The notes: generated by a model not told the origin, from the sequence alone. A stretch of DNA of 64,000 bases from IMGVR_UViG_3300042326_002445:159647-223646, one strand, 5' to 3'. Numbered from the stretch's first letter, positions 1,279 to 47,030 are shown. Made by a program: numbers and translations.

Positions 1279-1963
1279 CAATAGGCTTTGTCTTTGCAAT
1301 AAACTCTATGCACGTATCCATGATAGATTTATGGTTTTCTTTGCTAAGACAAAATGCTCTTGAAGAGCTTGCAAACATACCAGCATTTTTAGTATCCATA
1401 AACATTATGATTTGATTGTTGTTTTTTTGAGAAGAATTTATAAGCGCTTTGATGTACTCCTGTGTTTCTGACTCGTTGAGTCCACGGCAGCAATTATCAA
1501 TTAGCAAGCAGCAATTTTGTATGGTAGAATCATGCAGGTCTGCAAGAGGTATTGCAGCGCTTGTTGCTATCTCTCCAAAATAAAGGTCTTGATCAACCAC
1601 ATTGTGTCTTTCTCCTGGGTAGTACAATATGGCATTTTTAATAACTTTTTCTATAGATATCTTAGATTGAATGGCAATTTTATTGGTTAATTTGGATGGC
1701 AAGCCAAAAGATATTGGTTGCATATCATAAAAATTGCCCTCTACACTTATGTGTCTATCCAGTGTTGATTTTAAAATGCCATTTTCCCCATGGAACAGAT
1801 TCATCTGCCATGCGTCGGACAGTAATTTTGATAAATAAGTTTTACCTGAATTGTGATCTCCATAAATAGCAAATTCGTTATATGGATTTCCGTCTGGTTT
1901 ACTTAAATTTATGAATATATTTTTACCGTCTCGGTCTTTAAATTCAATTTTACTTATCTTCAT
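1271..1963 (-). CDS. P-loop NTPase-like protein
   Basis: Walker A GDHNSGKT; Walker B-like LLIDN. Confidence 0.55.
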   Translation of the reverse strand: MKISKIEFKDRDGKNIFINLSKPDGNPYNEFAIYGDHNSGKTYLSKLLSDAWQMNLFHGENGILKSTLDRHISVEGNFYDMQPISFGLPSKLTNKIAIQSKISIEKVIKNAILYYPGERHNVVDQDLYFGEIATSAAIPLADLHDSTIQNCCLLIDNCCRGLNESETQEYIKALINSSQKNNNQIIMFMDTKNAGMFASSSRAFCLSKENHKSIMDTCIEFIAKTKPIVT

Positions 1964-2339
1964 GGACTATGTGATTGCTTGGAACTACAACAACCATCTT
2001 TTTGAGGCTGTGTGGTTCTTTTGTCGTCACAATTCTTGTTTTCATTCCACTATCATCTTGCTTTTGAGAAACACCGTCAACAATGTTTCCACAAAAGTTC
2101 ATCTTAACTCTGTTTAAGATGTCTTCTTTTTTATTTTGTACTTTGAAAACTTTTCTTATATTTGCTGGAAAGATGTTATGGCTTTTTTCACTCTTGTCTT
2201 TGATTACAAGTATGTAGCCTTTAGTAGGGCTTGGGGCTATAGCTTGAAAGATTCCGGTCACAAAGTTGCCAAGTTCTGTTAAACCAGATATGTGCTTGTC
2301 TTTAAAGCCGTTTTCCAAACCTTTAAGGTACCAATTCAT
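1950..2339 (-). CDS. hypothetical protein with MNWY N-terminal motif
   Basis: 129 aa ORF starting MNWYLKG, like ORFs 16437..16838 and 46503..47030. Confidence 0.7.
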   Translation of the reverse strand: MNWYLKGLENGFKDKHISGLTELGNFVTGIFQAIAPSPTKGYILVIKDKSEKSHNIFPANIRKVFKVQNKKEDILNRVKMNFCGNIVDGVSQKQDDSGMKTRIVTTKEPHSLKKMVVVVPSNHIVHEDK

Positions 2340-2399
2340 GATTAATCATTCTTTCTATATTTTGTCGGATATGAGTGTCCTCATGGATATATATACAAG

Positions 2400-2897
2400 A
2401 TGGAAGAATTTTTTCCTATGAAAAAAAGACTGACTGAAATTGCCGTAAATTTAATGAACGCGCATTTTTCATCCATGATCCAAATGGATGGGCAGAAAAA
2501 GCATTGCAGCGCTATAGTCTACGACGGAGATGTCATAGCTGTTGGCTTTAACAGATACAGAACAAGTCAAATAGCATTTGAGTTTGGATATCAGTATGGC
2601 GAATATCACGCAGAACTGGACGCCTTAATCCAAGTGCATCACTTTATTAGAGATTTGGAGTACGATAAACTTTCTCTTGTTAACTTTAGGATTAACAGGT
2701 TTGCCAATATAGGCATTTCTAGGCCATGCTGTAAGTGCATGAAATGGGCAGATGGAGTATTCGGAACAATGGTATATACAGATGCTCATGGAGGTTTGGT
2801 TATGGAAAATAAAATGTCAAAAGAGCATTCTGTAATTCTCGATTCAGTTCAGTTGAGAAGAGAGCTTGGATGGAAGGATGGTGTATGTCATGCTTAA
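2400..2897 (+). CDS. zinc-dependent cytidine/dCMP deaminase-fold protein
   Basis: HAE and PCCKC zinc-binding motifs. Confidence 0.8.
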   Translation: MEEFFPMKKRLTEIAVNLMNAHFSSMIQMDGQKKHCSAIVYDGDVIAVGFNRYRTSQIAFEFGYQYGEYHAELDALIQVHHFIRDLEYDKLSLVNFRINRFANIGISRPCCKCMKWADGVFGTMVYTDAHGGLVMENKMSKEHSVILDSVQLRRELGWKDGVCHA

Positions 2898-3678
2898 GGA
2901 AAGAAAAAACAAATACGCATCTATGGTGTTTTCTCGTTCTGGGATTTGCAGCGATTTTGTCTCATGCTTCTCCAATAAAGAAAGCAATATTCTTTTGGCG
3001 TGCAGTGGTGGCCCAGATAGCGCTGCTATGATGGGAATTTCGAGAGTTTTACTTAATAGAGGCCTTGTTAAAAAGGTTGAGGTCGTTCATGTAAACCACA
3101 ACCTTAGAGAAGAGGCTTTGAATGATGCTGAGATGTGCGAGTCTCAAGCAGACATGTTTGATTTGCCATTTTTTTACTATGATATTTATCCTGGGCTTTT
3201 TGAAAAAAACACATATGAAGCTGGTAGAGAATTAAGATACCAGATCCTTCAGCACCATGCCCTCAAACATCATAGCGATGTGATCATGACGGCGCATCAT
3301 GCAGACGACATTGCCGAAACCGTTATGATGCATTTGGCAAGAGGATGTGGCATCAACGGTCTTTGTGGTGTCAGAGAAAGAAACTCTTCATTTGGACATG
3401 TTGATGTTGTAAGACCACTACTTAAGGTCAGAAAGAAAAAATTAGAAGAATTGTGCAATAAGGCTAATGTCCCTTATTGTATTGATAAATCTAACTTCAA
3501 TACAGAAAAGTCAAGAGCATATGTTAGGCACTCTGTAATTCCAGTTCTTGAAAAATTAAACCCAGCTTTTGTTGAACATGTTGTTAAAACAGCAATGTTC
3601 ATGCAAGACATTGTCGAGAAAGAATCATATGGGAAAAACAATAGAACCAAAAAGCATACTTCCAGTATTGACGGCTAA
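2866..3678 (+). CDS. tilS: tRNA(Ile)-lysidine synthetase (alternative start 2890)
   Basis: SGGPDS PP-loop, HVNHNLR, TAHHADDIAET, LARG, VVRPLL, DKSN, RAYVRH motifs; lacks the long C-terminal domains. Confidence 0.9.
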   Translation: MDGRMVYVMLKERKNKYASMVFSRSGICSDFVSCFSNKESNILLACSGGPDSAAMMGISRVLLNRGLVKKVEVVHVNHNLREEALNDAEMCESQADMFDLPFFYYDIYPGLFEKNTYEAGRELRYQILQHHALKHHSDVIMTAHHADDIAETVMMHLARGCGINGLCGVRERNSSFGHVDVVRPLLKVRKKKLEELCNKANVPYCIDKSNFNTEKSRAYVRHSVIPVLEKLNPAFVEHVVKTAMFMQDIVEKESYGKNNRTKKHTSSIDG

Positions 3679-3691
3679 TCAGGAGCAGATT

Positions 3692-4741
3692 ATGCATAAT
3701 AAATTTGAGCCAGATGTAAAACTTGATTTTTGTGATGTACTAATTTTGCCAAAATCTACTTCTGTAAGTAGCAGAAAAGAAGTCAATCTTGAAGTTCCAT
3801 TGAACTTCAGAAAAGCCGGTTTTTCTTTACCATGCGTTCCTGTGTGTGCATCCAATATGGACGGAGTGGGAACCATTTCGATGGGCAACAAGTTGGCATC
3901 ATACAAAATGATAACAACTTTAACAAAGTATACAACAGCTGGCGTTTTTGAGAAAGAAGACTATAAAAAATCAGATTACGTTTTTGGAACGTTTGGGTTA
4001 GATGATTACAGCAAATCTCTTATCCTCAACGAAAATATAGAAAATTACTTTTCTACTATTTGCCTTGATGTCGCAAATGGTTATATGGGCAAATTTTTAG
4101 ATTTTGTTAGTCTCGTTAGGGAGCGTTGGCCGCACATTGGTATACTCGCTGGCAATGTTGTCACCCCAGAGGGAGTTATCGATACCGCTCGTGCTGGTGC
4201 TGACTTTGTCAAAGTTGGCATAGGAAGTGGCTCAGTGTGCACAACACGGCGCGTTGCTGGCATAGGTTATCCTCAACTTTCAGCTCTTTTAGATTGTCGG
4301 ATTGCTGCTGAGGAAAGTGAATGCGGCATAGTTAGTGACGGCGGATGTGTTCATCCAGGGGACGTGTCTAAGGCTTTTGCCGCTGGCGCTGAGATCGTTC
4401 TGCTTGGTGGGATGCTCGCTGGTCATGACGAGGGCGCAGACGATGCAGTGGTCATTGACGATGGAGAAAAGAGAAGATTTATTTTCTCAGGATCTTCTTC
4501 TTCACGTGCTTTAAAAAAGATAGGAAATAATTCTAAGTACAGAACTTCGGAAGGAAGAGTTGTGCTTATGGAAGCTAAGGGTTCAGTTGAAGAAACTGTA
4601 AATCACATTTTGGGAGGCTTGCGTTCAACTTGTTCTTACACAAACTGTTTTGATCTTAAAGATTTGTATATGAATTCGAAATTCATTCGTGTCAATAGAC
4701 AACTTAATGAGTACTTCGAACATCACACAATAGGTGTTTAA
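3692..4741 (+). CDS. guaC: GMP reductase
   Basis: [46 protein letters not shown]; AGGAG RBS at 3681-3685 before ATG 3692. Confidence 0.92.
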
Positions 4742-4841
4742 AGTGTCTACCTGTTTTGTGGTCACTCGTCTTACGCAAGGGATATATATAGGTGTGAAGC
4801 GTACTTTGTATGTCGCCTAAATTATCAAAAGGAGAAAAGAT

Positions 4842-5189
4842 ATGGAAGAAAGAGAAAAAGTAACGAATGGCGACATTGAGTTTGCCATGTTTTTAGCTGA
4901 TAGTGAAGACGTAAAAGAGCAGAAAAAAGAATTTCTTTTGCCAGGAAACATCTTTAAGATTTATGTTGAAACTTCTTATAACGATGATGAAGAGGGAGAA
5001 GAATTAGAAATCATTTACAATGTTTACACATGTGTAGATGGCATGTATTTTCCAATTGGCGTTTTCAAGAGTAAAAAAGAAGCTTTAAAATTTGCAAGAA
5101 ATTCATGCATTCAGCTCGAGAAGACGTTAAAGCAGAGAATGATTGATTGTGTCTCCAATCCCCCAAAGAAGGAAAAAGACTATGAATAA
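4842..5189 (+). CDS. acidic hypothetical protein
   Basis: 115 aa ORF with AGGAG RBS. Confidence 0.75.
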   Translation: MEEREKVTNGDIEFAMFLADSEDVKEQKKEFLLPGNIFKIYVETSYNDDEEGEELEIIYNVYTCVDGMYFPIGVFKSKKEALKFARNSCIQLEKTLKQRMIDCVSNPPKKEKDYE

Positions 5190-5346
5190 GACCGGAAGAA
5201 GAATGCTTAAAGTTAAGAAGAAGCGTAAGGAAAGAATCAAGGCAAAGCGCCAGCAGGCAATTACGCAGGCTCAGATGGAGAAAGAAGCAAGATCGCGTCG
5301 CCGCAAGGGGCTGACCAGTCAGTCTGGCAAGTCTGCGACAGGATGA
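5182..5346 (+). CDS. small very basic protein
   Basis: K/R-rich MNKTGRRMLKVKKKRKER; ATG overlaps the end of the previous gene. Confidence 0.6.
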   Translation: MNKTGRRMLKVKKKRKERIKAKRQQAITQAQMEKEARSRRRKGLTSQSGKSATG

Positions 5347-5795
5347 ATAGCTGATTGTGGTATAAACCATGCTTTTGGCCTCTCGTTATATGTCTTCATC
5401 TCATGAGCATATCTCTCTGAGCCTTTAAGCCAGCCAGCAATCCTGTATTTACAGCCGCTCCCGACTACAAGAACATATATCTTGTGGTCGGGATCGTCTT
5501 TTCTAAGTATTAAATCAAAATGATCTTCTCTTGCGGTTCTTACTTCGTATTTTTTAACGTCTGGAGATGACTTAAAAGTATTAGCTGTAAGCTTATCCTC
5601 AACGCCCAAAAACTTTTTAAAAGCGACTTCTCCTCTAGCTCCTAAAAGATGATAATCTAAGTTTTTTAAACTAGAAGCACCGTGCTTATCGTGGAGCCCA
5701 AGTTCTTTAACTCCTTCCATTCTTTTTTCAGCTATCTGACAAGCTTCTTGTAGGTCTTTTAGGTTCAAAACTACAGTATTTTCTTCTTTACCCAC
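5319..5795 (-). CDS. hypothetical protein, possible PD-(D/E)xK-like fold
   Basis: GEVAF...PDV..YEVRT pattern. Confidence 0.45.
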   Translation of the reverse strand: MGKEENTVVLNLKDLQEACQIAEKRMEGVKELGLHDKHGASSLKNLDYHLLGARGEVAFKKFLGVEDKLTANTFKSSPDVKKYEVRTAREDHFDLILRKDDPDHKIYVLVVGSGCKYRIAGWLKGSERYAHEMKTYNERPKAWFIPQSAIHPVADLPD

Positions 5796-5823
5796 TTGAC
5801 ACTCCTATCGTACACGCTATGAT
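5796..5823 (+). promoter_or_regulatory. sigma70-like promoter, predicted leaderless transcript
   Basis: TTGACA 5796-5801, 16-nt spacer, TATGAT 5818-5823; ATG at 5830 is 7 nt after the -10. Confidence 0.75.
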
Positions 5824-5829
5824 ACTGGC

Positions 5830-8306: not shown

Positions 8307-8393
8307 GGACAGATGTCCGAGTGGTTGAAGGAGCAGCATTGGAAATGCTGTTTACGGGAAACCGTAACGTGGGTTCGAATCCCACTCTGTCCG
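8307..8393 (+). tRNA. tRNA-Ser (anticodon GGA)
   Basis: Acceptor GGACAGA/TCTGTCC, anticodon arm CAGCA-TTGGAAA-TGCTG, long variable arm, GTTCGAAT T-loop, G73; no encoded CCA. Confidence 0.95.
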
Positions 8394-8406
8394 CTATGGA
8401 GTTTCT

Positions 8407-8634: not shown

Positions 8635-8961
8635 ATGCGCAGGATTTTTAGTTTAATAAAAGATTTTGTAAAAACAGCATCAACGTCTCATTCTGTTTCT
8701 AGATTCCAATCAGCAGTTTTAAAATCTGGCAAATCTAGTTCCTCAAGAAAAAGCTTAGAGGTTAAGCTGCACTACAAGCGCTCATCTGAATTAGTGTCAG
8801 TAGACGTTGACGAATATACGAAGTCTGGGCATAAACATCGCAAGTATGAACTAGAAAACATATCGCCAAGCAATTTTTCTAGATTAGAAAAAATGATATC
8901 AAAAGGCCAATGGGGAATGTTTTTTGCGGTAGTTAACAAACACAGGGTTAAAGAAGACTAA
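8635..8961 (+). CDS. hypothetical protein
   Basis: 108 aa ORF; N-terminal FVKTAS. Confidence 0.7.
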   Translation: MRRIFSLIKDFVKTASTSHSVSRFQSAVLKSGKSSSSRKSLEVKLHYKRSSELVSVDVDEYTKSGHKHRKYELENISPSNFSRLEKMISKGQWGMFFAVVNKHRVKED

Positions 8962-15551: not shown

Positions 15552-16447
15552 AGATAGATTATATTGTTTTACATTGGAATAGGCCTTATTTTGCAGAAAT
15601 TAATGTAAAATTGGCAAAGCTTTATTTCCCTTTCATTAGAAATTTTATACTTCTTGACGATGGCTCAGAACCAAATTGTATTGAAATTTTAAAGAAAGAA
15701 TTTACTGAAGTAATAACGAGTAAAAATAATAAAAATGAGTGGAAAAACGGCAGTGTTGGTTATTTGTTGGAAAATTTTTTTACACAATCAGATGCGGACT
15801 TTATAATATTTACAGAAGATGATTTTTTACCGTGTTTGAATTATTTTGATGATTCAGAAACAGAAAACACTCTAATATCTCCTGATGTCCTGTTTAAACA
15901 GTGTGTGGTTGCAGAGAATTTAGAAACACATATACACAACATAGGCAGTCCTTTTTTCTATTTAAATTTAGGAAAATCTAATTATGGATGGAAGTCTTTA
16001 GACGCATACGAGTACAATGATAATTTTTTAAGAGTAATTCCGCATAAAGAAAAAAGAATTTATAGCAATTGGCCTTGGATAATGGGTAAAAATGTGTTTA
16101 AAAAAGCTATGAAAAATTTGAAAGATGCACCCATTTGGCAAATAGAAAATATAATTGACGGTAACATGAAAAAAATATCTAGAGTTAAGCCTTTGTGTGT
16201 AAAGCAAAAAATGTTTATACATGCTGGCTTCATATGCACAACGAGAAAAGACGCATTTTCTCAAATAGGCAAATTTAATAAAAATAGACTCACTAGTGCT
16301 AGTAACTTTACTGGAGAGTCTCAGACTAGTCTAGATGCTTTGCGTAGTGAATATTTATCTAAATATTTTTCTGGAAAAAGAATAAGCATGGAAGATCTTT
16401 TTACAAAAGGACTTCATCATGCTTTGAAAAATTTTATCACTTCATAG
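15548..16447 (+). CDS. GT2-like glycosyltransferase, tandem paralog of 14610..15551
   Basis: VLHWNRP, LDDGSE, TEDDF, YSNWPW, MFIH.G shared with the upstream gene. Confidence 0.7.
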   Translation: MKIDYIVLHWNRPYFAEINVKLAKLYFPFIRNFILLDDGSEPNCIEILKKEFTEVITSKNNKNEWKNGSVGYLLENFFTQSDADFIIFTEDDFLPCLNYFDDSETENTLISPDVLFKQCVVAENLETHIHNIGSPFFYLNLGKSNYGWKSLDAYEYNDNFLRVIPHKEKRIYSNWPWIMGKNVFKKAMKNLKDAPIWQIENIIDGNMKKISRVKPLCVKQKMFIHAGFICTTRKDAFSQIGKFNKNRLTSASNFTGESQTSLDALRSEYLSKYFSGKRISMEDLFTKGLHHALKNFITS

Positions 16448-16838
16448 TAACTTCTGAGACAATACCGGCTAATGGAATTGGCTGACTGATTGGCTGCCAT
16501 CCAGATAGCATATTACTGTCTTTGGGCTTAGCGCCTATCTCAGCGTTTGTTGCTACAGTCACGTGAGGCTTTCTGCCGTCTTTAACATCGTATCCTTTTA
16601 CTCCAACTGCTATCACCTTTTCATCTTTTGCCCATTCAGTGGCAGTCAAATTTATAATTTGCCCAATTTCTTTTTTGTTTTTTGCTGGTCCCATATTTAT
16701 GGTCATATGATGTGCATAAATCTTCCAGCCTTTTGGGATAAACGTACTCATTCTTTCAACCAAAATTTGATGACTTGCTTGGTCTAGAATGATGCCCGTA
16801 TATGATATGTTTTGATTAGCTTTTTTATACCAATTCAT
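16437..16838 (-). CDS. 2H phosphoesterase with MNWYKKA N-terminal motif
   Basis: Two HxT motifs: HHMTI and PHVTV. Confidence 0.8.
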   Translation of the reverse strand: MNWYKKANQNISYTGIILDQASHQILVERMSTFIPKGWKIYAHHMTINMGPAKNKKEIGQIINLTATEWAKDEKVIAVGVKGYDVKDGRKPHVTVATNAEIGAKPKDSNMLSGWQPISQPIPLAGIVSEVTMK

Positions 16839-16916: not shown

Positions 16917-16987
16917 TGCCCCGTGATGTAACGGTAGCATCGGAGCCTTTGAAGCTTTTTGTCTTGGTTCGAATCCAAGCGGGGCAG
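16917..16987 (+). tRNA. tRNA-Gln (anticodon TTG)
   Basis: Acceptor TGCCCCG/CGGGGCA, anticodon loop CTTTGAA, GTTCGAAT T-loop, U1-A72 and G73; no encoded CCA. Confidence 0.93.
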
Positions 16988-19004: not shown

Positions 19005-19379
19005 TTAGAAAGCTATTTGACGCATTTGCTCAAGTAAAGCTTTGCCTGATGTAAGCAATTCTATGTTTACATTTTTTTCTTTTGCTTTTGTCGCATTTTT
19101 TGGGTCTTTTACATATTCTATTGCTTCTTGAAATACATTTTTTAAAGCTATTAGTGCGTCGTTGTTATTAGACTGTTCTGCTTCTTCTATAAAACAATGC
19201 CAAGTGTTGTTGTGAGTTAATCCTCTAGGACCTGTATTACCACCTTGTATGTTTTTTATTGGGTTTACTTTAATAAAATTTTTATTAAGTATATCTACTA
19301 GGTCTTTACATTCTTGAGCTAGAACTGTAGACTGATTTTGTGAAATTTTATTAAAATGTTTGGTAACTATTTTAAGCAT
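19005..19379 (-). CDS. hypothetical protein
   Basis: 124 aa; N-terminal FNKISQ resembles YKISQ of ORF 46503..47030. Confidence 0.7.
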   Translation of the reverse strand: MLKIVTKHFNKISQNQSTVLAQECKDLVDILNKNFIKVNPIKNIQGGNTGPRGLTHNNTWHCFIEEAEQSNNNDALIALKNVFQEAIEYVKDPKNATKAKEKNVNIELLTSGKALLEQMRQIAF

Positions 19380-19397: not shown

Positions 19398-20015
19398 TTA
19401 TCTTATATTCCTATAGTCTTTAAATGTGTTTTCTATATCAGAATGATCTGCTCTTTGCCAAGCGAGGTGAGGCCTAAAGCCATAACACGGCATCTTTTTC
19501 TGCAAAAATGCTAAATGCAAATCTGCTGGCTTAGTAAATATCACGTTTTCACTAAAACGTTCCATAATCATTTCTAAGGCTGTTCTTTTGATGGCGTAGC
19601 AATGGGTCGTGTATGTCTTTCTAAGGCGATGTACGTGCCTGTTTATCATCATTATTGGATTATGTCTATGACTTCCACCTAGATAAAGCATTTGCCAATC
19701 TTTTGGCACCATAGGATAGTATTCCTGAAATCTTTTACCTACATTTCTATCGAATTCTACGTCATCTTCCATAATAAGTGCTGTTTTTATTGTCTTGTCT
19801 GCCAGTATCATCTCAAACACTTTTCTATGAGACATGCAGCAGCCAGCAGCTCCTGGTTTTAGTTCACCTATATTTGTCAGAGTGTGACCGTCAACTGCGT
19901 CTACAAAATGAACGTCTAATTGCAATTCTGAGAAGATTTGTGAGCATCTTTCTCTACGATCTGTTCGCCTCTGCAGATTAATGCAGTAAATTTTATTAAA
20001 ATCTCTTAGTAACAT
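19398..20015 (-). CDS. GT25 glycosyltransferase
   Basis: CINLQRRTDRR, DAVDG, GCCMSH, MEDD. Confidence 0.85.
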   Translation of the reverse strand: MLLRDFNKIYCINLQRRTDRRERCSQIFSELQLDVHFVDAVDGHTLTNIGELKPGAAGCCMSHRKVFEMILADKTIKTALIMEDDVEFDRNVGKRFQEYYPMVPKDWQMLYLGGSHRHNPIMMINRHVHRLRKTYTTHCYAIKRTALEMIMERFSENVIFTKPADLHLAFLQKKMPCYGFRPHLAWQRADHSDIENTFKDYRNIR

Positions 20016-20049
20016 ATATGATGTTTTGTCGAAAAAATATAACAATACT

Positions 20050-33111: not shown

Positions 33112-33945
33112 ATGCTTTTATCAATATTGGTTCCAGGCAAAAATGACAACTTTAGATACAATGGTTCAAAAACCATTGAATTTAATATTAATCAAACTTT
33201 AGATAATATAGAATATTCTGGGTTTAAAGATGTAGAACTCGTATTGTGCGATTGGGGTAGTGAGAAGAAAATAGTAGATGAAATAGTTAAAAGAAAACAT
33301 AAGAATTTTAAATGTGTTTATGTTCCCCCAGATATAGCACAAAAATATAATGGTCAGGCAAATTATTCTATAGTGCATCCAATTAACACTGCATTTAGGC
33401 ATAGCTCTGGTAAATATGTATGCTTCTGGGATTCTGATTGCTTTGTGCTTCAAGATAGCTTTGTAAAGCTTTATGAGTTTGTTCTTCAAATGGAAGCTAC
33501 TCAAGACATGCAATTTTATTGGGGTTCTAGATATCATATACCGTATGAATCCTATAATGATTTAAGAAGTCATAAAGAATTAGTTGCAAAAATAAATAAT
33601 GGTATGCAAGTTATGCATGATAAAATAGCTGGAGGAGGTAAATTTATGGGAGCCTCTATATCATTGTTAATGAACAGAATTTTATGGGAGGATAGTACTG
33701 GATGGTATGAAAATCTTCCGTATTGGGGATGGCAGGATATTGAGTTCCACCATCGCTTGATGAAGAGATACAGCTATGGCGGCGATCTGGAAGATTGGGG
33801 CATGAGTTTTTTTCACATGCTTCAGCCTGCCAGTAAAGACGGCACAAAAAATAAGCACTTGATGAATCCCTCAATAAACGCAACATTCTTTAAAGCTAAT
33901 CCTCCAAGTTGGGGTTTAGCAAATGAGAAATTGGAAATAATGTAA
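33112..33945 (+). CDS. GT2-like glycosyltransferase, tandem copy 1
   Basis: LCDWGS, WDSD DxD, WGWQDIEF. Confidence 0.7.
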   Translation: MLLSILVPGKNDNFRYNGSKTIEFNINQTLDNIEYSGFKDVELVLCDWGSEKKIVDEIVKRKHKNFKCVYVPPDIAQKYNGQANYSIVHPINTAFRHSSGKYVCFWDSDCFVLQDSFVKLYEFVLQMEATQDMQFYWGSRYHIPYESYNDLRSHKELVAKINNGMQVMHDKIAGGGKFMGASISLLMNRILWEDSTGWYENLPYWGWQDIEFHHRLMKRYSYGGDLEDWGMSFFHMLQPASKDGTKNKHLMNPSINATFFKANPPSWGLANEKLEIM

Positions 33946-34297
33946 TGATATTATCCATATTAATCCCTGGTAAAAATGATGATTTTCGATGCAATGGTAC
34001 AAAAACAATAGAATTTAATTTGAATCAAGTTTTGGATAATCTTGAATTTTTTAACTTTCCAGATTTAGAGTTAGTGCTTTGTGATTGGGGAAGTAAAAAG
34101 AAAATAGTAGGATCAATATTGGAAAGAAAACACAAAAACTTTAAATGCGTTTATGTCAGACCAAGCGTTGCTAAAAAATATAATGGTAAGGCGAATTATT
34201 CTATAGTACATCCAATTAATACTGCATTTAGGCATAGCTCTGGTAAATATGTATGCTTCTGGGATTCTGATTGCTTTGTGCTTCAAGATAGCTTTGT
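33388..34297 (+). repeat. 77-nt perfect direct repeat (33388-33464 and 34221-34297) between the tandem GT paralogs
   Basis: actgcatttagg...gatagctttgt is identical in both copies, 833 nt apart; a second identical tract of about 38 nt lies at the 3' ends. Confidence 0.9.
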
Positions 34298-34784
34298 CAA
34301 GCTATACGAGTTTGTTCATCAAATGAATATAAATTCTGATAAAAAATTTTACTGGGGATCTAGATGGCATATATCTTATGATGAATATACGTATCTATCT
34401 TCTCACAAAGATTTATTAGAAAAAATAAACAATGGTCTTCAGCCATCAAGAAAAGACTCATTTGACTATGGTCAAAATTTTATGGGTGGTTCTATATCGC
34501 TCTTGATGGACAGGTCAATATGGGAAGAAAGTACAGGTTGGTATGAGAAATTGCCCTATTGGGGATGGCAGGACATTGAGTTTCACAGAAGATTGTTGAC
34601 CAAATATGTTCAGGGTGAAGATCTTGTTTCGCATGGAATGGTATTTTATCATTTAAATCAACCAGAAAAAATGGATAAATTACAAAATAAACACAAATTT
34701 AATGAGCAAATAAATGCAAAATCTTTTAAAGCTAATCCTCCAAGTTGGGGTTTAGCAAATGAAAAATTGGAGATAATAGAATGA
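33945..34784 (+). CDS. GT2-like glycosyltransferase, tandem copy 2
   Basis: Same motifs; clear paralog of 33112..33945. Confidence 0.7.
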   Translation: MILSILIPGKNDDFRCNGTKTIEFNLNQVLDNLEFFNFPDLELVLCDWGSKKKIVGSILERKHKNFKCVYVRPSVAKKYNGKANYSIVHPINTAFRHSSGKYVCFWDSDCFVLQDSFVKLYEFVHQMNINSDKKFYWGSRWHISYDEYTYLSSHKDLLEKINNGLQPSRKDSFDYGQNFMGGSISLLMDRSIWEESTGWYEKLPYWGWQDIEFHRRLLTKYVQGEDLVSHGMVFYHLNQPEKMDKLQNKHKFNEQINAKSFKANPPSWGLANEKLEIIE

Positions 34785-37375: not shown

Positions 37376-37377
37376 AT

Positions 37378-42295: not shown

Positions 42296-42315
42296 GTTTT
42301 ATTTATCGTCATTAT

Positions 42316-42343
42316 AAAAATAACCGCTGTCTTGCGACAGCGG
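42316..42343 (-). terminator. intrinsic terminator
   Basis: Minus strand CCGCTGTC-GCAA-GACAGCGG followed by TTATTTTT. Confidence 0.8.
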
Positions 42344-42418
42344 ATAAAAAGGGGTAATGGGGCGAAAATTGGCAAGGTGTTACGCCCATAGCACCTTGAT
42401 TAGTGGAGTAGGGAAGAA

Positions 42419-43231
42419 TTAGACGTATCGTCTGTCTGGATTCTTCTTCATGATCTCTTTGCCCATTTTGACGAGAGCGTTTTTGCTTCTCATCGCATGC
42501 ACGATAGCTGGATCAACAACCGACTCCTTATGAGTCATGTATTCAACAAATTTCCAAGGCATACCTTCAGGTATGTTGTCTTTTAATGCTCCAGTCCATT
42601 CACTTGCCCATATGTCCATGTAGTTTTTATGCATTCTTTTTTCGTAATCAAGACTGAACATATGAGACAATACCCCTATAGGGACCTCCTCTGGTAAATT
42701 AAGTCCTAATTTTGCTTGATATTGTCTGAAATTATTCACTACATATTTTGCGTGTTTGGCGAACTCTTTTTTACAAATCCAGAAACCACCATTTGTGTTG
42801 TACACCACTTTTTGAGACACTCCAAACTGTCTCCAAAGGTTGACCATATTTTCATTCTTCACGCTCCACCAGTCAGACCTTAGTGTTGTTGGGTCATTGA
42901 GCGGACTTTCCAGAAAGCTGTGCCAAACATCATTACCTATAATTTCTGAAAAATCTAGGATTGGTTTTCTGACAAAATAATGATCACTATCTATAAATAC
43001 TAGCAGATCGTAATCCATTTCTGCGACCTTGACAAGATACTCAAATTTCCAATATTGAGTTTGATCCATTTGTATCTCTTTTATCATAGCTCTTGTTTTG
43101 CAGCCATGAAGAGGCTCATCGCAGTAAACCACAATGTCATGTTCAATGCCGCAGTTCCTCATGCTTTGCACAAGAGATTGTAGCATATACCTATATTCAC
43201 CCCAAGCAACAGACCAAATCAATGTTTTCAT
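42419..43231 (-). CDS. GT-A nucleotide-diphospho-sugar transferase-like
   Basis: FIDSDH DxD, NGGFWI, PEE; paralog of 6915..7808. Confidence 0.65.
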   Translation of the reverse strand: MKTLIWSVAWGEYRYMLQSLVQSMRNCGIEHDIVVYCDEPLHGCKTRAMIKEIQMDQTQYWKFEYLVKVAEMDYDLLVFIDSDHYFVRKPILDFSEIIGNDVWHSFLESPLNDPTTLRSDWWSVKNENMVNLWRQFGVSQKVVYNTNGGFWICKKEFAKHAKYVVNNFRQYQAKLGLNLPEEVPIGVLSHMFSLDYEKRMHKNYMDIWASEWTGALKDNIPEGMPWKFVEYMTHKESVVDPAIVHAMRSKNALVKMGKEIMKKNPDRRYV

Positions 43232-44283
43232 GATTTTACCTCTATGTTTTGACCAGCAAGGTTTAAAAGATTATCCCATTTAGCAATATATTTATTCTTG
43301 TCACACCATATATCTTTGGCGTACTCACTAGCCTTTTTGCCCATAGTCTTTCTAGTATGCGTGTCACACATATGCCTTGCTGCGTCCTTAGCCTGATCAA
43401 GATTGTCCCATAAGAATCCGCATTCATTTTCTATGATCATGTTTGGAAAGTTCCATTTGCGTGGAGCTATTACTGGTGCTCCAGTAAGCTGGCTTTCCAT
43501 AATTGCCCTACTTTGATTTTCTACAAATTTAAAATTGCAGTTGTACAGAAATACGTCAAGGTCTACGAACCACTCATGAGTTGGCATAGCGTTAGTTGCG
43601 TACAGTCTCCATTTATCATTGAATTCATACCAGCTGTAAATGGAAGATAATGAGTCAGACCATCCTAGTATTGAATACTCACAGTTTAGCCCTTCGCAAA
43701 CTTGGTCATAAAAAATAGGAAAGTTATCGCCAAATTTCATTACGTCATCTCTGGAAACTTTTCCAAACACTGTTTTATTTCTTAAGGGTCTGTCTATATA
43801 CTTCCACATATCAGCTTCAAAGTAATTTTCTAATACAAATGTTTTTTGAAGACGATTTTGATTTGCTACTTCTTTATGCATCACAGACCTATGAAAGGGT
43901 GATGTGTATAGTACAACGTCTACTTGATTTTTCTTTATGGCGCTCAATTCCTCTGGAGTATGCCACATCATATCATTAGACCACATGAATTTTAGACCAG
44001 ATTCTTTTATGAAATTTATTCTTTGAAAATCAGCAAAAACACGGAAATTGCAATTGGAGTAGGCAAAACCTGTTAATTTTTTTGGCAAGCTTGACATCAT
44101 GCAATATTTTATGCCAAGTTTATCTAAAAAGTCTGTATTATGCTTTTCTCTCAGTCTAAATTCATCATTGGGAATACATGTAATATTATGAGTATCTTTT
44201 AATAAAACGAGCAATTCTTTCAGTCTTGTGTCTGCTCCACCAAGATCTGATATCCATTGAAATACATATAGGTTTTCTTTCAT
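43228..44283 (-). CDS. GT4 (GT-B) glycosyltransferase
   Basis: LGGADTRL, ENQSRAIMESQLTGAPVIAP, ENECGFL. Confidence 0.75.
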   Translation of the reverse strand: MKENLYVFQWISDLGGADTRLKELLVLLKDTHNITCIPNDEFRLREKHNTDFLDKLGIKYCMMSSLPKKLTGFAYSNCNFRVFADFQRINFIKESGLKFMWSNDMMWHTPEELSAIKKNQVDVVLYTSPFHRSVMHKEVANQNRLQKTFVLENYFEADMWKYIDRPLRNKTVFGKVSRDDVMKFGDNFPIFYDQVCEGLNCEYSILGWSDSLSSIYSWYEFNDKWRLYATNAMPTHEWFVDLDVFLYNCNFKFVENQSRAIMESQLTGAPVIAPRKWNFPNMIIENECGFLWDNLDQAKDAARHMCDTHTRKTMGKKASEYAKDIWCDKNKYIAKWDNLLNLAGQNIEVKS

Positions 44284-44336
44284 GTATCATTTATCGGTTA
44301 AAAAGTAAATCTGCTGATTAGACGAAGAACTATTAT

Positions 44337-44999
44337 ATGGAAAATACAGTAACATTTACAACTACAGCGATGGCTAGACCGGAGATACTTGAACAAACAT
44401 ATTATAATTTTCAAATATGCTTGAATATAAACATGAAAGATTTTGATTTACGAATAAATGTTGACCCATTGCCAAAAATAAATAAAGTTGATGAAGTAGT
44501 AAATGTAGCAAAGAAATTCTTTAAAAATGTTGACTATAACATATCAAAAGATGCCAATTTTCCTAGCGCAATCAAGTGGTGTTGGATGGACTTGCACACT
44601 AAATACACTTTTCACTTGGAAGACGATTGGGAGTTAACAAGGGGTATACCGCTCTATGAATTAGTAAAAATGCTTGAGAGCAATAAAGATATTAATCAAG
44701 TTTTACTAAGACCGTATCTTGAAACACATAAAGTAAGTTTAGTTCCTGGATTAATAAGAAGTGATGTCGCAATGTATTTAAGTAGGCATATGTTGCTTAA
44801 TAAAAATCCAGAAAAACAAATTCATTCAAATGAGCATACAGGAAAAGACGGAGATCCTGGCTTTGACGCCAATAAAGTCATAGTATATCCAGAAGATGTG
44901 TGCCTAAGGGACATCGGAAGAGTTTGGATGAAATCTCAATCTGTAATCAGGCCTGGCCCAGACTTCGTAAAATGGGAAAAGAAAAAAGATATTTACTGA
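44337..44999 (+). CDS. GT2-like glycosyltransferase
   Basis: TAMARP, INVD, FHLEDDW. Confidence 0.6.
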   Translation: MENTVTFTTTAMARPEILEQTYYNFQICLNINMKDFDLRINVDPLPKINKVDEVVNVAKKFFKNVDYNISKDANFPSAIKWCWMDLHTKYTFHLEDDWELTRGIPLYELVKMLESNKDINQVLLRPYLETHKVSLVPGLIRSDVAMYLSRHMLLNKNPEKQIHSNEHTGKDGDPGFDANKVIVYPEDVCLRDIGRVWMKSQSVIRPGPDFVKWEKKKDIY

Positions 45000-46003
45000 G
45001 CCATTTCGGGTGTAGCTACATTTTCCTTATGACCAGAAAACTGAATATTGACAATATCAGTATTGTCTCTAATAACGTCATCTAAAAATCTCTGCATCTC
45101 ATAAAGACTTGAGAATTCAACAAGTTTATTTTCAAACTTTAGTTTAAAAGTTCCAACAGCTTGCAGTATATCGCATTTATTAATGACTAGATCTGTGCAT
45201 CCAGATATCTTAATTGACTCCATAAGCTTGTCAACGTTTAGCCAATTCACCATTCTTTTTCTTCCGGTAGTAGATCCAAATTCTTCTCCTATTGTGATTA
45301 TCTTATTTAAAGTTTCATCATCCCAAAGAGATTCTGGGAATAGGGGGTCAACTCCGCTTTTAGTGTCATAAATTTTAGCAACACCAATCAGTCTGCGTAT
45401 TTTTTGAGGAGAGAAGCCAAGCGAGCAAGCACCATATGGCATAGTGGTACTACTTGTGACAAACGGATAGCAGCCATGGTCTATGTCGAGCCAAACACTC
45501 TGTGCCCCTTCGCAAAGTACCTTTCCCTCTAATTTTCCATCCCATAAGTACTCGCTCGGAAATAAGTCTTTTGCCCTGATCCCCTTGCGAAGCATTTTAT
45601 CTGCATAGCATGGAGCAATTCCCTGTCCAGTTGTTCCCAATCCTTTTTTTAAGTTATTTACATCAAACTGAATGTGTTCTTCAGTTATAATATGCGCATT
45701 AGGAGATACTTTTACTAAAGAAGTGTCAAAACCAGATGCCTTTAAGTATTCAATTTCTTCAAAAAACTTTTTCACATTTACTACACAACCTGGGCCTATA
45801 ATGCACTTTTTACCTTTAAAAATACCAGAAGGTATCATGTGTGTTTTGTATTTTTTGTCATTTAAATATACTGTATGTCCAGCATTTGGCCCACCATTCC
45901 ATCTGCAAACATAGTCATACTTTTCAGCAAGTGCGTTTGCAATTTTTCCCTTACCTTCATCGCCCCAAGAAAGTCCGTAAATAACATCAACAAATTTGAT
46001 CAT
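44993..46003 (-). CDS. purA: adenylosuccinate synthetase, short form
   Basis: WGDEGKG, RWNGGPNAGHT, IPSG, GTTGQGIAPCY, EGAQ, PFVTSS, TTGR. Confidence 0.93.
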   Translation of the reverse strand: MIKFVDVIYGLSWGDEGKGKIANALAEKYDYVCRWNGGPNAGHTVYLNDKKYKTHMIPSGIFKGKKCIIGPGCVVNVKKFFEEIEYLKASGFDTSLVKVSPNAHIITEEHIQFDVNNLKKGLGTTGQGIAPCYADKMLRKGIRAKDLFPSEYLWDGKLEGKVLCEGAQSVWLDIDHGCYPFVTSSTTMPYGACSLGFSPQKIRRLIGVAKIYDTKSGVDPLFPESLWDDETLNKIITIGEEFGSTTGRKRMVNWLNVDKLMESIKISGCTDLVINKCDILQAVGTFKLKFENKLVEFSSLYEMQRFLDDVIRDNTDIVNIQFSGHKENVATPEMAQ

Positions 46004-46144
46004 CTGATACCTTTCTTAAAAAGTTTATAAATAAATTTAAAAGACATGTGTCCAATTGCGAAAGCAACCGCAAGAACTGTTAGCATTGTCCAAGTATTTT
46101 CACTCATATATTTTCTACTTTTACTTTCTTTATTATCGACTTAA

Positions 46145-46227
46145 TGCGAGCGGAGGGATTCGAACCTTCGTAGACAAATGTCAGCAGATTTACAGTCTGC
46201 CCTCGTTGACCGCTTGAGTACACTCGC
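46145..46227 (-). tRNA. tRNA-Tyr (anticodon GTA)
   Basis: GCGAGTG/CGCTCGC acceptor, GCAGA-CTGTAAA-TCTGC, long variable arm, G1-C72 and A73 (bacterial type). Confidence 0.95.
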
Positions 46228-46230
46228 AAA

Positions 46231-46302
46231 AGCCACCTGTGGGATTTGAACCCACAACCTCTGCTTTACAAAAGCAAGGCTCTACCGTTGAGCTAAAGTG
46301 GC
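46231..46302 (-). tRNA. tRNA-Thr (anticodon TGT)
   Basis: GCCACTT/AGGTGGC acceptor, TTGCT-TTTGTAA-AGCAG, TTCAAAT T-loop. Confidence 0.92.
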
Positions 46303-46309
46303 ATTCAAA

Positions 46310-46382
46310 CTCCTCCGACTGGACTCGAACCAGTGACCCGGGAGTTAACAGCTCCCTGCTCTACCAACTGAGCTACAGAGGA
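46310..46382 (-). tRNA. tRNA-Asn (anticodon GTT)
   Basis: TCCTCTG/CGGAGGA acceptor, GGGAG-CTGTTAA-CTCCC, G73. Confidence 0.95.
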
Positions 46383-46386
46383 ATAA

Positions 46387-46476
46387 CGGATAGAGAGGGA
46401 TTCGAACCCCCGGATGACTTCTTGAGCCATCGGCGGTTTAGTAAACCGCAGCCTTAAACCACTCGGCCATCTATCC
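46387..46476 (-). tRNA. tRNA-Ser body with anticodon ACT (A34)
   Basis: GGATAGA/TCTATCC acceptor, GCGGT-TTACTAA-ACCGC anticodon arm, long variable arm, G73. Confidence 0.88.
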
Positions 46477-46502
46477 ATGAATTTTATATCGGCACTGGAT
46501 CT

Positions 46503-47030
46503 TCACATGCCTGGTGGATTATAGGTTTGTTCGTATTCTTTTTTTGCAATCCTGTAATAAGCGCCTTCGCCCTCTTTTACAAGATAGTCTCCTGGCTTAA
46601 GAACCATGTCTTCTCCCCAAGAAGCTTTAAAGGTAATTGGTTCTGTTCCTAAATATTCAGCTACCATTCTAGGAGATTGTTCTGGAGTTACATCTTCCCC
46701 CATATTACCTTCATACATCTTTGAAAACTTTGAGGACTTTATAACATATTTTTCCGAACTTGGGCCACTCATTATGACATCGCCATCTTTAGCGGTGTTT
46801 TCTGTTTCTTTTCCGTCAGAAGTCATTGTCACTACTCTTAAATCTTCCTTATCATTTACTCCATAACTCATTGGAGGCATGCTTTCTATATTGCCGCCAA
46901 TGATTTTAAAGAAAGAGTATCTTCTTGCTTGTTTGTGAGTAGGTAGAAATTTCAAGCTTGATGCTACGTCTTCAATCCCATGCGAATTTCTACCTTGATC
47001 TTCTGATTGCGATATTTTGTACCAGTTCAT
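46503..47030 (-). CDS. PGDYG-like domain protein with MNWYKISQ N-terminal motif
   Basis: ASWGEDMVLKPGDYLV...YRIAKKEYEQTY. Confidence 0.65.
   Translation of the reverse strand: MNWYKISQSEDQGRNSHGIEDVASSLKFLPTHKQARRYSFFKIIGGNIESMPPMSYGVNDKEDLRVVTMTSDGKETENTAKDGDVIMSGPSSEKYVIKSSKFSKMYEGNMGEDVTPEQSPRMVAEYLGTEPITFKASWGEDMVLKPGDYLVKEGEGAYYRIAKKEYEQTYNPPGM

What the first reader, a model, noticed from the sequence alone, without database searches (positions are those of the whole stretch)
1950..47030. Shared N-terminal MNWYK tag on three unrelated proteins
Seen: ORFs 1950..2339 (MNWYLKG), 16437..16838 (MNWYKKANQ) and 46503..47030 (MNWYKISQ) start with the same peptide but carry unrelated bodies (unknown, 2H phosphoesterase, PGDYG-like). 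Weaker K-x-(A/S)-(Q/S) leaders occur in 19005..19379 (FNKISQ) and 8635..8961 (FVKTAS). Known: T4 internal proteins share a short N-terminal capsid-targeting sequence that is removed by the prohead protease. Inference: this is a portable capsid-loading tag marking proteins injected with the DNA.
Basis: partly seen in the sequence, partly recalled or inferred. Interest (0 to 1): 0.72.

Follow-up and report, generated by a model that had tools for sequence, protein, structure and literature searches.

The report
Portable MNWYK leader in megaphage proteins
A short eight-residue start (M-N-W-Y-K-x-A/S-Q) is attached to well over a hundred unrelated small enzymes and regulators in a group of uncultured giant phages, and it most likely acts as an address label that loads these proteins into the virus particle for delivery into the host, though this has not been shown directly.

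Summary
In the 223.6-kb virus record holding the window, NWY occurs in only three real ORFs, each time right after the initiator Met (expected 0.008; P about 9e-8). Two of them (2H phosphoesterase 16437-16838; PGDYG protein 46503-47030) carry a canonical 8-residue leader, M-N-W-Y-K-x-[A/S/I]-[Q/K]. The third (1950-2339, MNWYLKG) shares only MNWY. The two "weaker" leaders are not members.

The leader is portable and widespread. I found 289 tagged ORFs in 132 unrelated body clusters, up to 10 per complete 460-548-kb phage genome, often in tandem islands. The motif gave 29 hits against 1 for a scrambled control, and all 29 lie at ORF starts. Codon usage shows the constraint is on the peptide.

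Capsid targeting is supported only indirectly:
- The same PGDYG body carries a T4-type leader (MKTFxEF...E) in phages with T4-type capsid and prohead protease.
- The two leader types are mutually exclusive.
- MNWYK tracks one capsid family (phrog_2522; 11/20 leader-bearing records versus 0/9).
- Tagged genes cluster near the capsid gene (p about 0.006).
- The cargo families (ART-PolyVal, GNAT, HicA, 2H/Acb1-like, kinases) match those predicted to be injected.

Removal of the leader by a protease is unsupported. No virion data exist.

The parts
16815..16838 (-). Canonical leader of P0002: codons 1-8, MNWYKKAN
   Evidence: Translation. The alignment shows an 8-residue leader, a short linker and then the conserved ISYTG core; untagged homologs start at the core. 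AF2 residues 1-7 have pLDDT <50 and the fold starts at residue 11.
16437..16814 (-). Body of P0002: 2H phosphoesterase (CNPase/LigT-like), stop codon included
   Evidence: Two HxT motifs, HHMTI and PHVTVA. Weak Pfam match to tRNA_lig_CPD. AF2 pLDDT 90.5. Foldseek to the CNPase catalytic domain: prob 1.0, TM about 0.7.
47007..47030 (-). Canonical leader of P0003: codons 1-8, MNWYKISQ
   Evidence: Translation. The nearest homologs keep MNWYK[SLI][SA]Q; about 115 more distant homologs have other N-termini.
46503..47006 (-). Body of P0003: linker plus the conserved FLPTxK segment and the PGDYG domain, stop codon included
   Evidence: Pfam PF14083 at 36.4 bits, cut-off 27, residues 78-170. Family alignment A2. 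The same domain sits inside about 1,400-aa multidomain proteins and is fused to a Zeta/AAA_33 kinase elsewhere.
2316..2339 (-). Non-canonical MNWY start of P0001 (MNWYLKGL)
   Evidence: Translation. MNWY is invariant in all 8 known relatives down to 36% identity, but K5/[AS]7/Q8 are not kept. A low-confidence AF2 model places residues 3-12 in a helix packed on a beta-sheet.
1950..2315 (-). Body of P0001: unknown, lineage-restricted family of about 129 aa
   Evidence: No Pfam or PHROG hit. Only 6 + 2 relatives in 5.8 billion and 1.8 billion protein libraries.
19005..19379 (-).
   Evidence: The motif is at residues 9-14 and has no W-Y. The 37%-identical relative reads FKKVSE.
8635..8961 (+).
   Evidence: The motif is at residues 11-16 and has no W-Y. 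It is conserved only as part of the body in the 74%-identical relative.

Best explanation
The eight N-terminal residues M-N-W-Y-K-x-[A/S/I]-[Q/K] form a portable, flexible leader peptide used by one group of uncultured giant phages. This group has a phrog_2522-type major head protein of about 290 aa. G000 belongs to the 0.4-0.55-Mb sub-lineage with a split DnaE polymerase.

The leader is attached to many unrelated small accessory proteins: ADP-ribosyltransferases, GNAT acetyltransferases, HicA-type RNases, 2H/Acb1-like phosphoesterases, AAA_33/Zeta-type kinases, HTH proteins, PGDYG proteins and small membrane proteins.

Most likely mechanism (inferred, not shown): the leader is an address label. 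During head assembly it docks on a component of the procapsid interior (scaffold, core or capsid protein of this head type). The tagged proteins are thereby enclosed in the virion and delivered into the host with the DNA, where they act before any phage gene is expressed. This would make it a functional analogue of the T4 internal-protein capsid-targeting sequence, but unrelated to it in sequence.

Shown here: N-terminal exclusivity, portability, constraint at the peptide level, the disordered nature of the leader, restriction to certain lineages, co-variation with head-gene type, and linkage to the capsid gene.

Inferred: docking in the procapsid, packaging and injection.

Unknown: whether the leader is cleaved off.
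For: (1) Portability.
- The full motif gives 29 hits in IMG/VR against 1 for the scrambled order. All 29 are at ORF starts.
- Complete genomes carry up to 10 tagged genes each; the reversed-pattern control gives 0.
- The pooled set is 289 ORFs in 132 body clusters, 92 of them singletons.
- In 147 bystander ORFs not selected by any search pattern, K5 is kept in 86%.

(2) Peptide, not RNA or DNA.
- Synonymous codons are used near background ratios, and N/S/T alternate at position 2.
- Upstream DNA is not conserved.
- Tagged genes sit in tightly packed operons.

(3) Add-on nature.
- Homologs of both canonical bodies exist without the leader or with a different leader.
- AF2 models the leader as disordered and outside the fold.

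(4) Same cargo, different label.
- T4 ipII/ipIII start MKTYQEFIAE and ipI starts MKTFKEF.
- In contigs G008 and G010, several unrelated proteins start MKTF/MKSFxE[FW]; in G008 one of them is the PGDYG homolog, and G010's PGDYG ORF has an internal MKKFNEWMLEN that fits the type.
- All five contigs whose PGDYG protein has such a leader encode an S77 prohead protease (E 1e-27 to 1e-30) and a gp23-type capsid (E 1e-86 to 1e-101).

(5) Mutual exclusivity.
- MNWYK genomes (1.70 Mb): 31 MNW[YF]K starts, 0 T4-type leaders, 0 S77, 0 gp23.
- T4-like genomes (1.09 Mb): 0 MNWYK starts.

(6) The leader tracks capsid type. The phrog_2522 major head protein is found in 5/5 of G001-G005, in 6/15 further leader-bearing fragments (11-53% complete), and in 0/9 records without the leader.

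(7) Linkage to the head module.
- In G003 a tagged gene is the next gene after the capsid gene (111 nt).
- In G001 four tagged genes lie 1-5 kb downstream on the same strand.
- In G004 one lies 0.9-1.4 kb away and others follow tail-fibre-like genes.
- Combined proximity p = 0.006.

(8) Cargo type.
- ART-PolyVal, GNAT, HicA, 2H/Acb1-like, AAA_33 and HTH bodies.
- ART, GNAT, kinase, RNase and nucleotide-signal-degrading domains of this kind are described in polyvalent proteins predicted to be packaged and injected; T4 Alt (an ART) is head-packaged (PMC5512222, PMC7824862).
- Here, PGDYG is also fused with an M78-type peptidase, a nucleotidyltransferase or a Zeta kinase in multidomain proteins.
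Against: - There is no direct evidence: no virion proteome, no cultured member, no binding partner identified.
- Co-variation with head type is confounded by phylogeny. The two phage groups differ in everything, not only in their heads.
- No conserved cleavage motif follows the tag. No S77, S78 or ClpP-type protease was found in the complete tag-rich genomes. So the T4-like 'target then cleave' scheme is not reproduced.
- The commonest alternative N-terminus of the PGDYG family (FRKYIDIINE) is single-copy in its genomes, so it is not shown to be a portable leader.
- The ART-PolyVal homolog of cultured phage CBB (CBB_455) is absent from the published virion proteome and lies in the predicted early region (PMC5259590).
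- In G002 the nearest tagged gene is 18.7 kb from the capsid gene. In G000 the three genes are scattered on the minority strand among sugar-metabolism genes and tRNAs.
- The cargo types fit equally well with ordinary early-expressed host-takeover genes.
Confidence: 0.55

Rival explanations
1. The leader is a docking or regulatory peptide for intracellular (not virion) use. It would be a shared handle by which a phage or host factor recognises a set of early host-takeover proteins. Examples: an N-terminal degron that times their removal (it loosely fits the polar-hydrophobic-hydrophobic-basic pattern of ClpX N-terminal signals, recalled from memory), a chaperone or hub-binding motif, or an import signal for a phage-built compartment.
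For: - The cargo is typical of early host-takeover and anti-defence functions.
- The CBB ART homolog lies in an early region and is not in the virion proteome.
- No cleavage motif and no recognisable prohead protease.
- The leader is disordered and exposed, as a recognition peptide would be.
- A papain-type C1 peptidase co-occurs with the tag-rich genomes and is adjacent to a tagged operon in G002.
Against: - It does not explain why the leader tracks the capsid family or why tagged genes cluster by the capsid gene.
- It does not explain why the same body carries a T4-CTS-type leader exactly in phages with T4-type head machinery.
- Only the provirus-flagged G003 encodes ClpP.
- No compartment-shell gene was looked for or found.
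Confidence: 0.25
2. The leader is an expression device. It would be an optimised first few codons or nascent peptide that boosts translation initiation or early elongation, copied between genes by recombination, with no targeting role.
For: - A-rich codons are mildly favoured within the tag: AAA 86% versus 77%, CAA 91% versus 72%.
- The tag is strictly at position 1.
- Many tagged genes lack an obvious Shine-Dalgarno sequence.
Against: - Synonymous and even non-synonymous (N/S/T) variation at conserved positions points to selection on the peptide.
- Conservation extends to residues 7-8.
- It is confined to about 2-3% of genes, all accessory, and is not seen on the capsid gene.
- It occurs both on genes with strong SD sites and on translationally coupled genes.
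- It does not explain the exclusivity with T4-type leaders or the link to capsid type.
Confidence: 0.07
3. There is no function. The shared start would reflect common ancestry of an N-terminal module or chance.
For: P0001's MNWY start may be part of its fold, and its family has no leaderless members.
Against: - Chance probability is 9e-8.
- 132 unrelated body clusters.
- 29 hits versus 1 for the scrambled control.
- Leaderless and differently-led homologs of the same bodies exist.
Confidence: 0.02

Closest known systems
T4 capsid-targeting sequence (CTS) of internal proteins IPI/IPII/IPIII and Alt
   Same: - A short N-terminal leader shared by otherwise unrelated, non-essential proteins of one phage.
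- The cargo includes host-modifying or anti-defence enzymes.
- The same PGDYG body is found with a T4-type leader in T4-like contigs and with MNWYK here.
- Leader genes are partly clustered, and one sits next to tRNA genes, as ipI does in T4.
   Different: - No sequence similarity (MKTYQEFIAE versus MNWYKxAQ).
- No L/I-x-E cleavage site.
- The genomes lack the S77 protease and the gp23 capsid.
- The cargo set is far larger (up to 10 or more per genome; 132 body clusters overall).
- Packaging and cleavage are unproven here.
Long N-terminal propeptides of ejection/inner-body proteins of phiKZ-like giant phages (SPN3US gp47, gp53/54; PMC5694885)
   Same: Giant phages that load many proteins into the head through N-terminal regions. 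The paralogs gp53/54 share an identical 15-residue N-terminus (MANFVKSKLARESVE), which that paper compares to a CTS.
   Different: Those propeptides are mostly 80-130 residues, end in A/S/G-x-E sites and are cut by a gp21-related protease. They are shared by paralogs rather than by unrelated families.
Polyvalent proteins of phages and conjugative elements (Iyer et al. 2017, PMC5512222)
   Same: Same kinds of domains (ART-PolyVal, GNAT, Zeta/P-loop kinase, RNase, nucleotide-processing enzymes) and the same predicted role as effectors delivered with the DNA. Here, PGDYG is found inside such multidomain proteins.
   Different: Polyvalent proteins join 2-15 domains in one polypeptide. Here each domain is a separate small protein with its own 8-residue leader, so a shared label would replace covalent linkage.
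Encapsulin cargo-loading peptides
   Same: A short, disordered terminal peptide that directs diverse cargo into an HK97-fold shell. The capsid protein here is a small HK97-type protein of about 290 aa without a delta domain.
   Different: Encapsulin peptides are usually C-terminal with a different consensus. The shells here are capsids of 0.2-0.55-Mb phages with tails. No homology was tested.

Membership tests
T4-type capsid-targeting sequence system | A short N-terminal leader shared by otherwise unrelated proteins of the same phage | tested here: met
   2-3 per G000 fragment, up to 10 per complete genome, 132 body clusters.
T4-type capsid-targeting sequence system | Leader sequence of the MKT[Y/F]xEF type | tested here: not met
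   T4 leaders were read from NC_000866. The T4-type pattern gives 0 hits in G000-G004.
T4-type capsid-targeting sequence system | Leader ends at an L/I-x-E site cut by the prohead protease | tested here: not met
   Acidic residues are excluded at positions 6-8, and there is no positional E enrichment at positions 9-30.
T4-type capsid-targeting sequence system | Genome encodes a gp21-type (S77) prohead protease and a gp23-type capsid | tested here: not met
   PF03420: 0/5. PF07068: 0/6. Positive controls: 5/5 in G006-G010.
T4-type capsid-targeting sequence system | Leader is sufficient to load a protein into proheads; the cargo is present in virions and injected | not testable with these tools
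   No cultured member and no proteome. Only indirect support: capsid-type co-variation and gene linkage.
2H phosphoesterase superfamily (P0002 body) | Two H-x-T/S motifs on a duplicated alpha+beta fold | tested here: met
   HHMTI and PHVTVA are invariant. AF2 pLDDT 90.5. Foldseek to CNPase/LigT-type structures: prob 1.0, TM about 0.7. The Pfam tRNA_lig_CPD match is only 17.6 bits, below the cut-off of 23.
PGDYG protein family PF14083 (P0003 body) | Match to the Pfam model above its gathering score | tested here: met
   36.4 bits against 27, residues 78-170. PGDY is conserved in alignment A2.
Polyvalent proteins (Iyer et al. 2017) | 2-15 effector domains in one polypeptide | tested here: not met
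   Tagged proteins are mostly single-domain with a median of 153 aa. They share domain families with polyvalent proteins (ART-PolyVal; PGDYG fusions).
ClpX N-terminal recognition signal (degron) | N-terminal polar-hydrophobic-hydrophobic-basic-hydrophobic pattern that confers ClpXP-dependent turnover | not tested
   The resemblance is recalled from memory only. ClpP is found only in G003. Turnover cannot be tested here.

The most novel reading that the evidence does not exclude
MNWYK-x-A/S-Q is a previously undescribed, cleavage-independent packaging label that defines the whole injected-effector arsenal of a large clade of uncultured megaphages. On this reading one could list every protein these phages deliver into the host simply by reading the first eight codons. 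The label would be recognised by a component of the phrog_2522-type head (capsid protein or the conserved ~180-aa 'MALIVE' protein) and could carry foreign proteins into capsids.
Probability: 0.35. Interest if true: 0.88.

Novelty: new variant of a known kind. Interest (0 to 1): 0.78.

Why it matters
If the leader is a virion address label, it gives a sequence-only way to list the proteins that uncultured giant phages inject into their hosts. The list is rich in ADP-ribosyltransferases, acetyltransferases, RNases, kinases and cyclic-nucleotide phosphodiesterase-like enzymes that probably disable host defence and gene expression in the first seconds of infection.

It would also show that the "one short label, many cargos" strategy of T4 arose independently, or was replaced, in a head lineage without the T4 protease, and that it can substitute for the covalent domain fusion seen in polyvalent proteins.

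In practice, an 8-residue tag could serve to load proteins into phage capsids. The tagged set is also a ready catalogue of candidate anti-defence proteins.

Even if the function proves different (a degron or a docking motif), a strictly N-terminal octapeptide shared by 132 or more unrelated families is an unrecognised sorting or recognition signal in phage biology. No description of it was found in the searchable literature.

Tried and rejected
- DNA-level repeat, promoter cassette or leaderless-mRNA explanation: rejected. Upstream DNA is not conserved, tagged genes sit in tightly packed operons, and promoter/terminator scans around the three window genes are at chance level.
Only frame and ORF-start fractions were used.
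- PHROG scans of ten G000 proteins next to the giant ORFs and of head-module neighbours gave almost nothing. G000 itself (CheckV 55%) has no recognisable capsid, protease or terminase gene, so the head link could not be tested in the window's own record.
- Head protease search: S77, S78, ClpP and Terminase_6N were not found in the tag-rich complete genomes. These are first-look searches, so absence is not proof.
- Cultured relatives: tblastn of tagged bodies against GenBank phages found homologs only from residue about 11 onward, with no MNWYK leader.
- CBB proteome: the ART homolog CBB_455 was not detected. The text of the XacN1 proteome paper gave no information on ORF211.
- The FRKYIDI leader variant is single-copy per genome, so it was not counted as a portable leader.
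- C1 papain-type peptidase as leader peptidase: its co-occurrence is suggestive but incomplete.
- Complex prediction of the G004 peptidase with a tagged cargo: 'no answer' (score 0.00; partner poorly folded). This is not evidence either way.
- The prokaryote-genome scan gave only about the number of hits expected by chance. Real tagged ORFs there lie on short phage-like MAG contigs labelled Halanaerobium, Flavobacteriales and Patescibacteria, so no host can be named.
- The AF2 model of P0001 was too poor (pLDDT 60) to identify its fold.

Full report
**1. The observation**

The three ORFs exist at the stated coordinates but on the minus strand. They begin as follows:
- 1950-2339 (P0001, 129 aa): MNWYLKGLENG
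- 16437-16838 (P0002, 133 aa): MNWYKKANQNI
- 46503-47030 (P0003, 175 aa): MNWYKISQSED

The window is the last 64 kb of a single 223,646-bp virus record, G000 (CheckV estimate 55% complete).

In that whole record the tripeptide NWY occurs 11 times in six frames. Only three occurrences are in long ORFs, and each follows the initiator Met directly. From the record's amino-acid composition:
- 0.008 MNWY starts are expected; P(>=3) = 9e-8, or 7e-4 after correction for all 8000 tripeptides.
- 3.2 internal NWY are expected and none is seen.

The DNA upstream of the three starts does not align, and the codons differ (AAT/AAC, TAC/TAT). So the similarity is in the first few codons only.

All three genes lie on the minority strand (30 of 186 crude gene calls).

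**2. The bodies are unrelated, and the leader is an add-on**

P0002 is a 2H phosphoesterase:
- two invariant HxT motifs;
- a confident AF2 model (pLDDT 90.5);
- Foldseek matches to the CNPase catalytic domain (prob 1.0, TM about 0.7).

Residues 1-7 of that model have pLDDT below 50, and the fold starts at residue 11. So the leader is a flexible extension outside the fold.

P0003 carries a PGDYG domain (PF14083, 36.4 bits).

P0001 has no known family.

Homolog searches show the leader behaves as a module.
- P0002: the 13 closest relatives start MNW[Y/F/L]K-x-[A/S]. More distant ones start directly at the ISYTG core. Two start MKE[Y/F]xEFDKVFEEN followed by a long linker.
- P0003: the five closest relatives (63-89% identity) start MNWYK[S/L/I][S/A]Q. 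About 115 relatives at about 60% identity start quite differently.

P0001 is a different case. All eight known relatives, down to 36% identity, keep MNWY. But positions 5-8 do not follow the consensus, no leaderless homolog exists, and a low-confidence model puts residues 3-12 in a helix packed on the domain. I treat it as a non-canonical member.

They are not members.

**3. The leader is widespread and portable**

- A scan of IMG/VR for M-N-W-Y-K-x-[A/S]-Q gave 29 matches, against 1 for the order-scrambled control.
- All 29 are at ORF starts, mostly with no alternative upstream start, on bodies of 28 to 1,235 aa.
- Whole-record scans found 10, 10, 2, 7 and 1 MNW[Y/F]K starts in five large contigs. 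Two of these are complete genomes of 548 and 461 kb. The reversed-pattern control found none.
Many short contigs carry 2-4 tagged genes.
- The 596-Gb prokaryote genome collection gave only the number expected by chance (16 found, about 17 expected). Genuine tagged ORFs there occur only on a few short, phage-like MAG contigs.

Pooling everything gives 289 complete tagged ORFs with a median of 153 aa. With the leader removed they fall into 132 BLASTP clusters, 92 of them singletons.

In 147 "bystander" ORFs chosen only for M-[N/S/T]-W-[Y/F] at an ORF start:
- K5 is present in 86%;
- position 7 is A/I/S;
- position 8 is K/Q.

Acidic residues are excluded at positions 6-8. From position 9 onward the composition returns to background.

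[N/S/T]WYK follows an initiator Met 312 times, and occurs 82 times anywhere else in 338,000 residues of open frame.

Synonymous codons inside the tag are used at about genome-wide ratios. Position 2 tolerates N, S or T. Tagged genes often sit in operons with gaps of 1-4 nt. So the constraint is on the peptide, not on the RNA, a promoter or a DNA repeat.

Tagged genes form islands. One 14-kb stretch (L273) has about 14 consecutive genes with the leader or close variants of it.

**4. What the cargo is**

Pfam identifies the following among tagged proteins:
- ART-PolyVal ADP-ribosyltransferases
- HicA toxin
- GNAT acetyltransferases
- 2H/Acb1-like phosphoesterases
- DUF5661
- AAA_33 kinases
- multi-HTH proteins
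- a nucleotidyltransferase

There are also small proteins with a transmembrane helix right after the tag.

ART, GNAT, kinase, RNase and nucleotide-signal-degrading domains of this kind are described in the polyvalent proteins of phages, which are predicted to be packaged and injected. T4 Alt, an ART, is known to be head-packaged (PMC5512222, PMC7824862).

The PGDYG domain itself sits inside proteins of about 1,400 aa, together with an M78-type peptidase and a nucleotidyltransferase. Elsewhere it is fused to a Zeta/AAA_33 kinase.

**5. Evidence on function**

(a) *Same cargo, different label.*
- T4 ipII/ipIII start MKTYQEFIAE and ipI starts MKTFKEF (read from NC_000866).
- Many non-MNWYK PGDYG homologs start MKTFREFVEMMQE-N, MKSFQEYYLMRE-N and the like, with an [LIVM]-x-E at residues 12-15.
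- In contigs G008 and G010, several unrelated proteins (172-aa PGDYG, 142, 386, 499 and two of 55 aa) start MKTF/MKSF-x-E-[F/W].
- All five large contigs whose PGDYG gene has such a start encode an S77 (T4 gp21-type) prohead protease (E 1e-27 to 1e-30) next to a gp23-type capsid gene (E 1e-86 to 1e-101).

(b) *Mutual exclusivity.*
- The five MNWYK records (1.70 Mb) have no T4-type leader, no S77 and no gp23.
- The five T4-like records (1.09 Mb) have no MNW[Y/F]K start.

(c) *The leader tracks capsid type.*
- G001-G005 all encode one major-head-protein family (phrog_2522, about 290 aa, E 1e-64 to 1e-74). This includes G003-G005, in which the search for G000's split DnaE found no match.
- The T4-like records tested lack this family.
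- Six of 15 further leader-bearing fragments (11-53% complete) have it. None of 7 control contigs does.
- Pooled: 11/20 against 0/9.

(d) *Linkage to the head module.*
- The head module is conserved: a large protein, then a ~180-aa "MALIVE" protein, then the capsid protein.
- In G003 the tagged gene is the very next gene (111 nt).
- In G001 four tagged genes lie 1-5 kb downstream on the same strand.
- In G004 one lies about 1 kb away, and others follow a tail-fibre-like gene and a 990-aa gene.
- The combined chance probability of these distances is 0.006.

G000 shares a 58%-identical split DnaE fragment with G001 and G002. It is therefore a fragment of that megaphage lineage. Its own head module is not on the contig.

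**6. What speaks against this, or remains open**

- Nothing here shows that the proteins are in virions.
- Co-variation with head type is confounded by phylogeny.
- There is no conserved cleavage motif and no recognisable S77, S78 or ClpP protease in the complete tag-rich genomes.
- The FRKYIDIINE variant of the PGDYG N-terminus is single-copy in its genomes.
- The ART homolog of cultured phage CBB was not detected in its virion proteome and lies in an early region.
- A papain-type C1 peptidase co-occurs with the three tag-rich genomes and directly precedes a four-gene tagged operon in G002. But it is absent from G003. A complex prediction with a tagged cargo gave no answer.

**7. Verdict**

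The leader is real, strictly N-terminal, selected at the peptide level, portable and restricted to certain lineages.

The best-supported reading is a virion (capsid) address label that works like the T4 CTS but is not a member of that system (confidence about 0.55). The rivals are:
- an intracellular recognition or degron peptide for early effectors (0.25);
- an expression-enhancing start (0.07);
- no function (0.02).

No description of the motif was found in the searchable literature.

Noticed in passing
G000:C1:371-84881 and 127234-152899 (outside the window; loci L001-L008): About half of the 223.6-kb record is taken up by giant ORFs (5,596, 3,965, 3,947, 3,286, 2,808, 2,671, 2,587 aa and others), all on one strand. 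The mid-sized proteins between them have no PHROG match. Their nature is unknown; fibres, a tail or a surface layer are possibilities.
   Followed up: partly
window 11453-45000: A block of about 35 genes of about 200-340 aa looks like sugar or polysaccharide modification. A family-25 glycosyltransferase at 19398-20045 is confirmed by Pfam. Several products start with Rossmann-type GxxGxxG motifs. There is a tandem pair of close paralogs at 33112-33945 and 33945-34784. This is unusually large for a phage.
   Followed up: partly
G000:C1:97192-100489 (L005:17192-20000): The DnaE-type Pol III alpha is split into two adjacent ORFs: PHP plus the start of the NTPase domain, then the rest plus the fingers. 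The first part has 58%-identical counterparts in frames of the same size in the complete 548-kb and 461-kb genomes. The split therefore looks conserved rather than an assembly error.
   Followed up: partly
window 46144-46477, 16917-16987, 8307-8394: There are six tRNA genes. A cluster of four (Tyr, Thr, Asn, Ser) lies immediately downstream of the tagged PGDYG gene, and tRNA-Gln lies just upstream of the tagged 2H gene. In T4, ipI also lies beside the tRNA cluster. This may be coincidence.
   Followed up: no
L256:2110-4191 (G002, about 4.2-6.7 kb): A papain-family C1 cysteine protease is interrupted by an intein with an HNH endonuclease. It lies directly upstream of four consecutive MNWYK-tagged genes. 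Intein-free C1 peptidases occur in G001 and G004.
   Followed up: partly
L256:8232-10489 (G002): Five tandem small genes all start MKIR[K/Q/N]GFVSNSSSSSF. This is a second shared N-terminus, but here the bodies look paralogous, so it is probably a gene family rather than a portable tag.
   Followed up: no
L366-L372 (G008, G010): Uncultured T4-like contigs (S77 protease, gp23 capsid) carry several unrelated genes that start MKTF/MKSF-x-E-[F/W], very close to the T4 internal-protein leader. This suggests the T4-type CTS system has a wider cargo range in environmental relatives, the PGDYG protein included.
   Followed up: partly
L334-L337, L353-L357, L360; L315/L316: PGDYG occurs as an internal domain of proteins of about 1,400-1,450 aa, with an M78/IrrE-type peptidase and a cytidylyltransferase-like domain. 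It also occurs as the C-terminal domain of a Zeta-toxin/AAA_33 kinase fusion. The Pfam family is annotated only as 'PGDYG protein'.
   Followed up: partly
L522:5814-6125 (G002:81813-82124): An untagged 103-aa protein starting MIFYHGTSEENW (an ART-like H-G-T start) lies two genes downstream of the capsid gene in G002. G002 is the one tag-rich genome with no tagged gene close to its capsid gene.
   Followed up: no
L279:1279-1515, L273:10736-11008: HicA-type toxin domains carry the MNWYK leader (Pfam HicA_toxin, E 2e-9). No obvious HicB partner is next to them in the stretches read.
   Followed up: no
window 44993-46003 (-): The product starts MIKFVDVIYGLSWGDEGKGK, which reads like the P-loop start of adenylosuccinate synthetase (PurA). 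This was judged by eye only and not checked with a profile.
   Followed up: no
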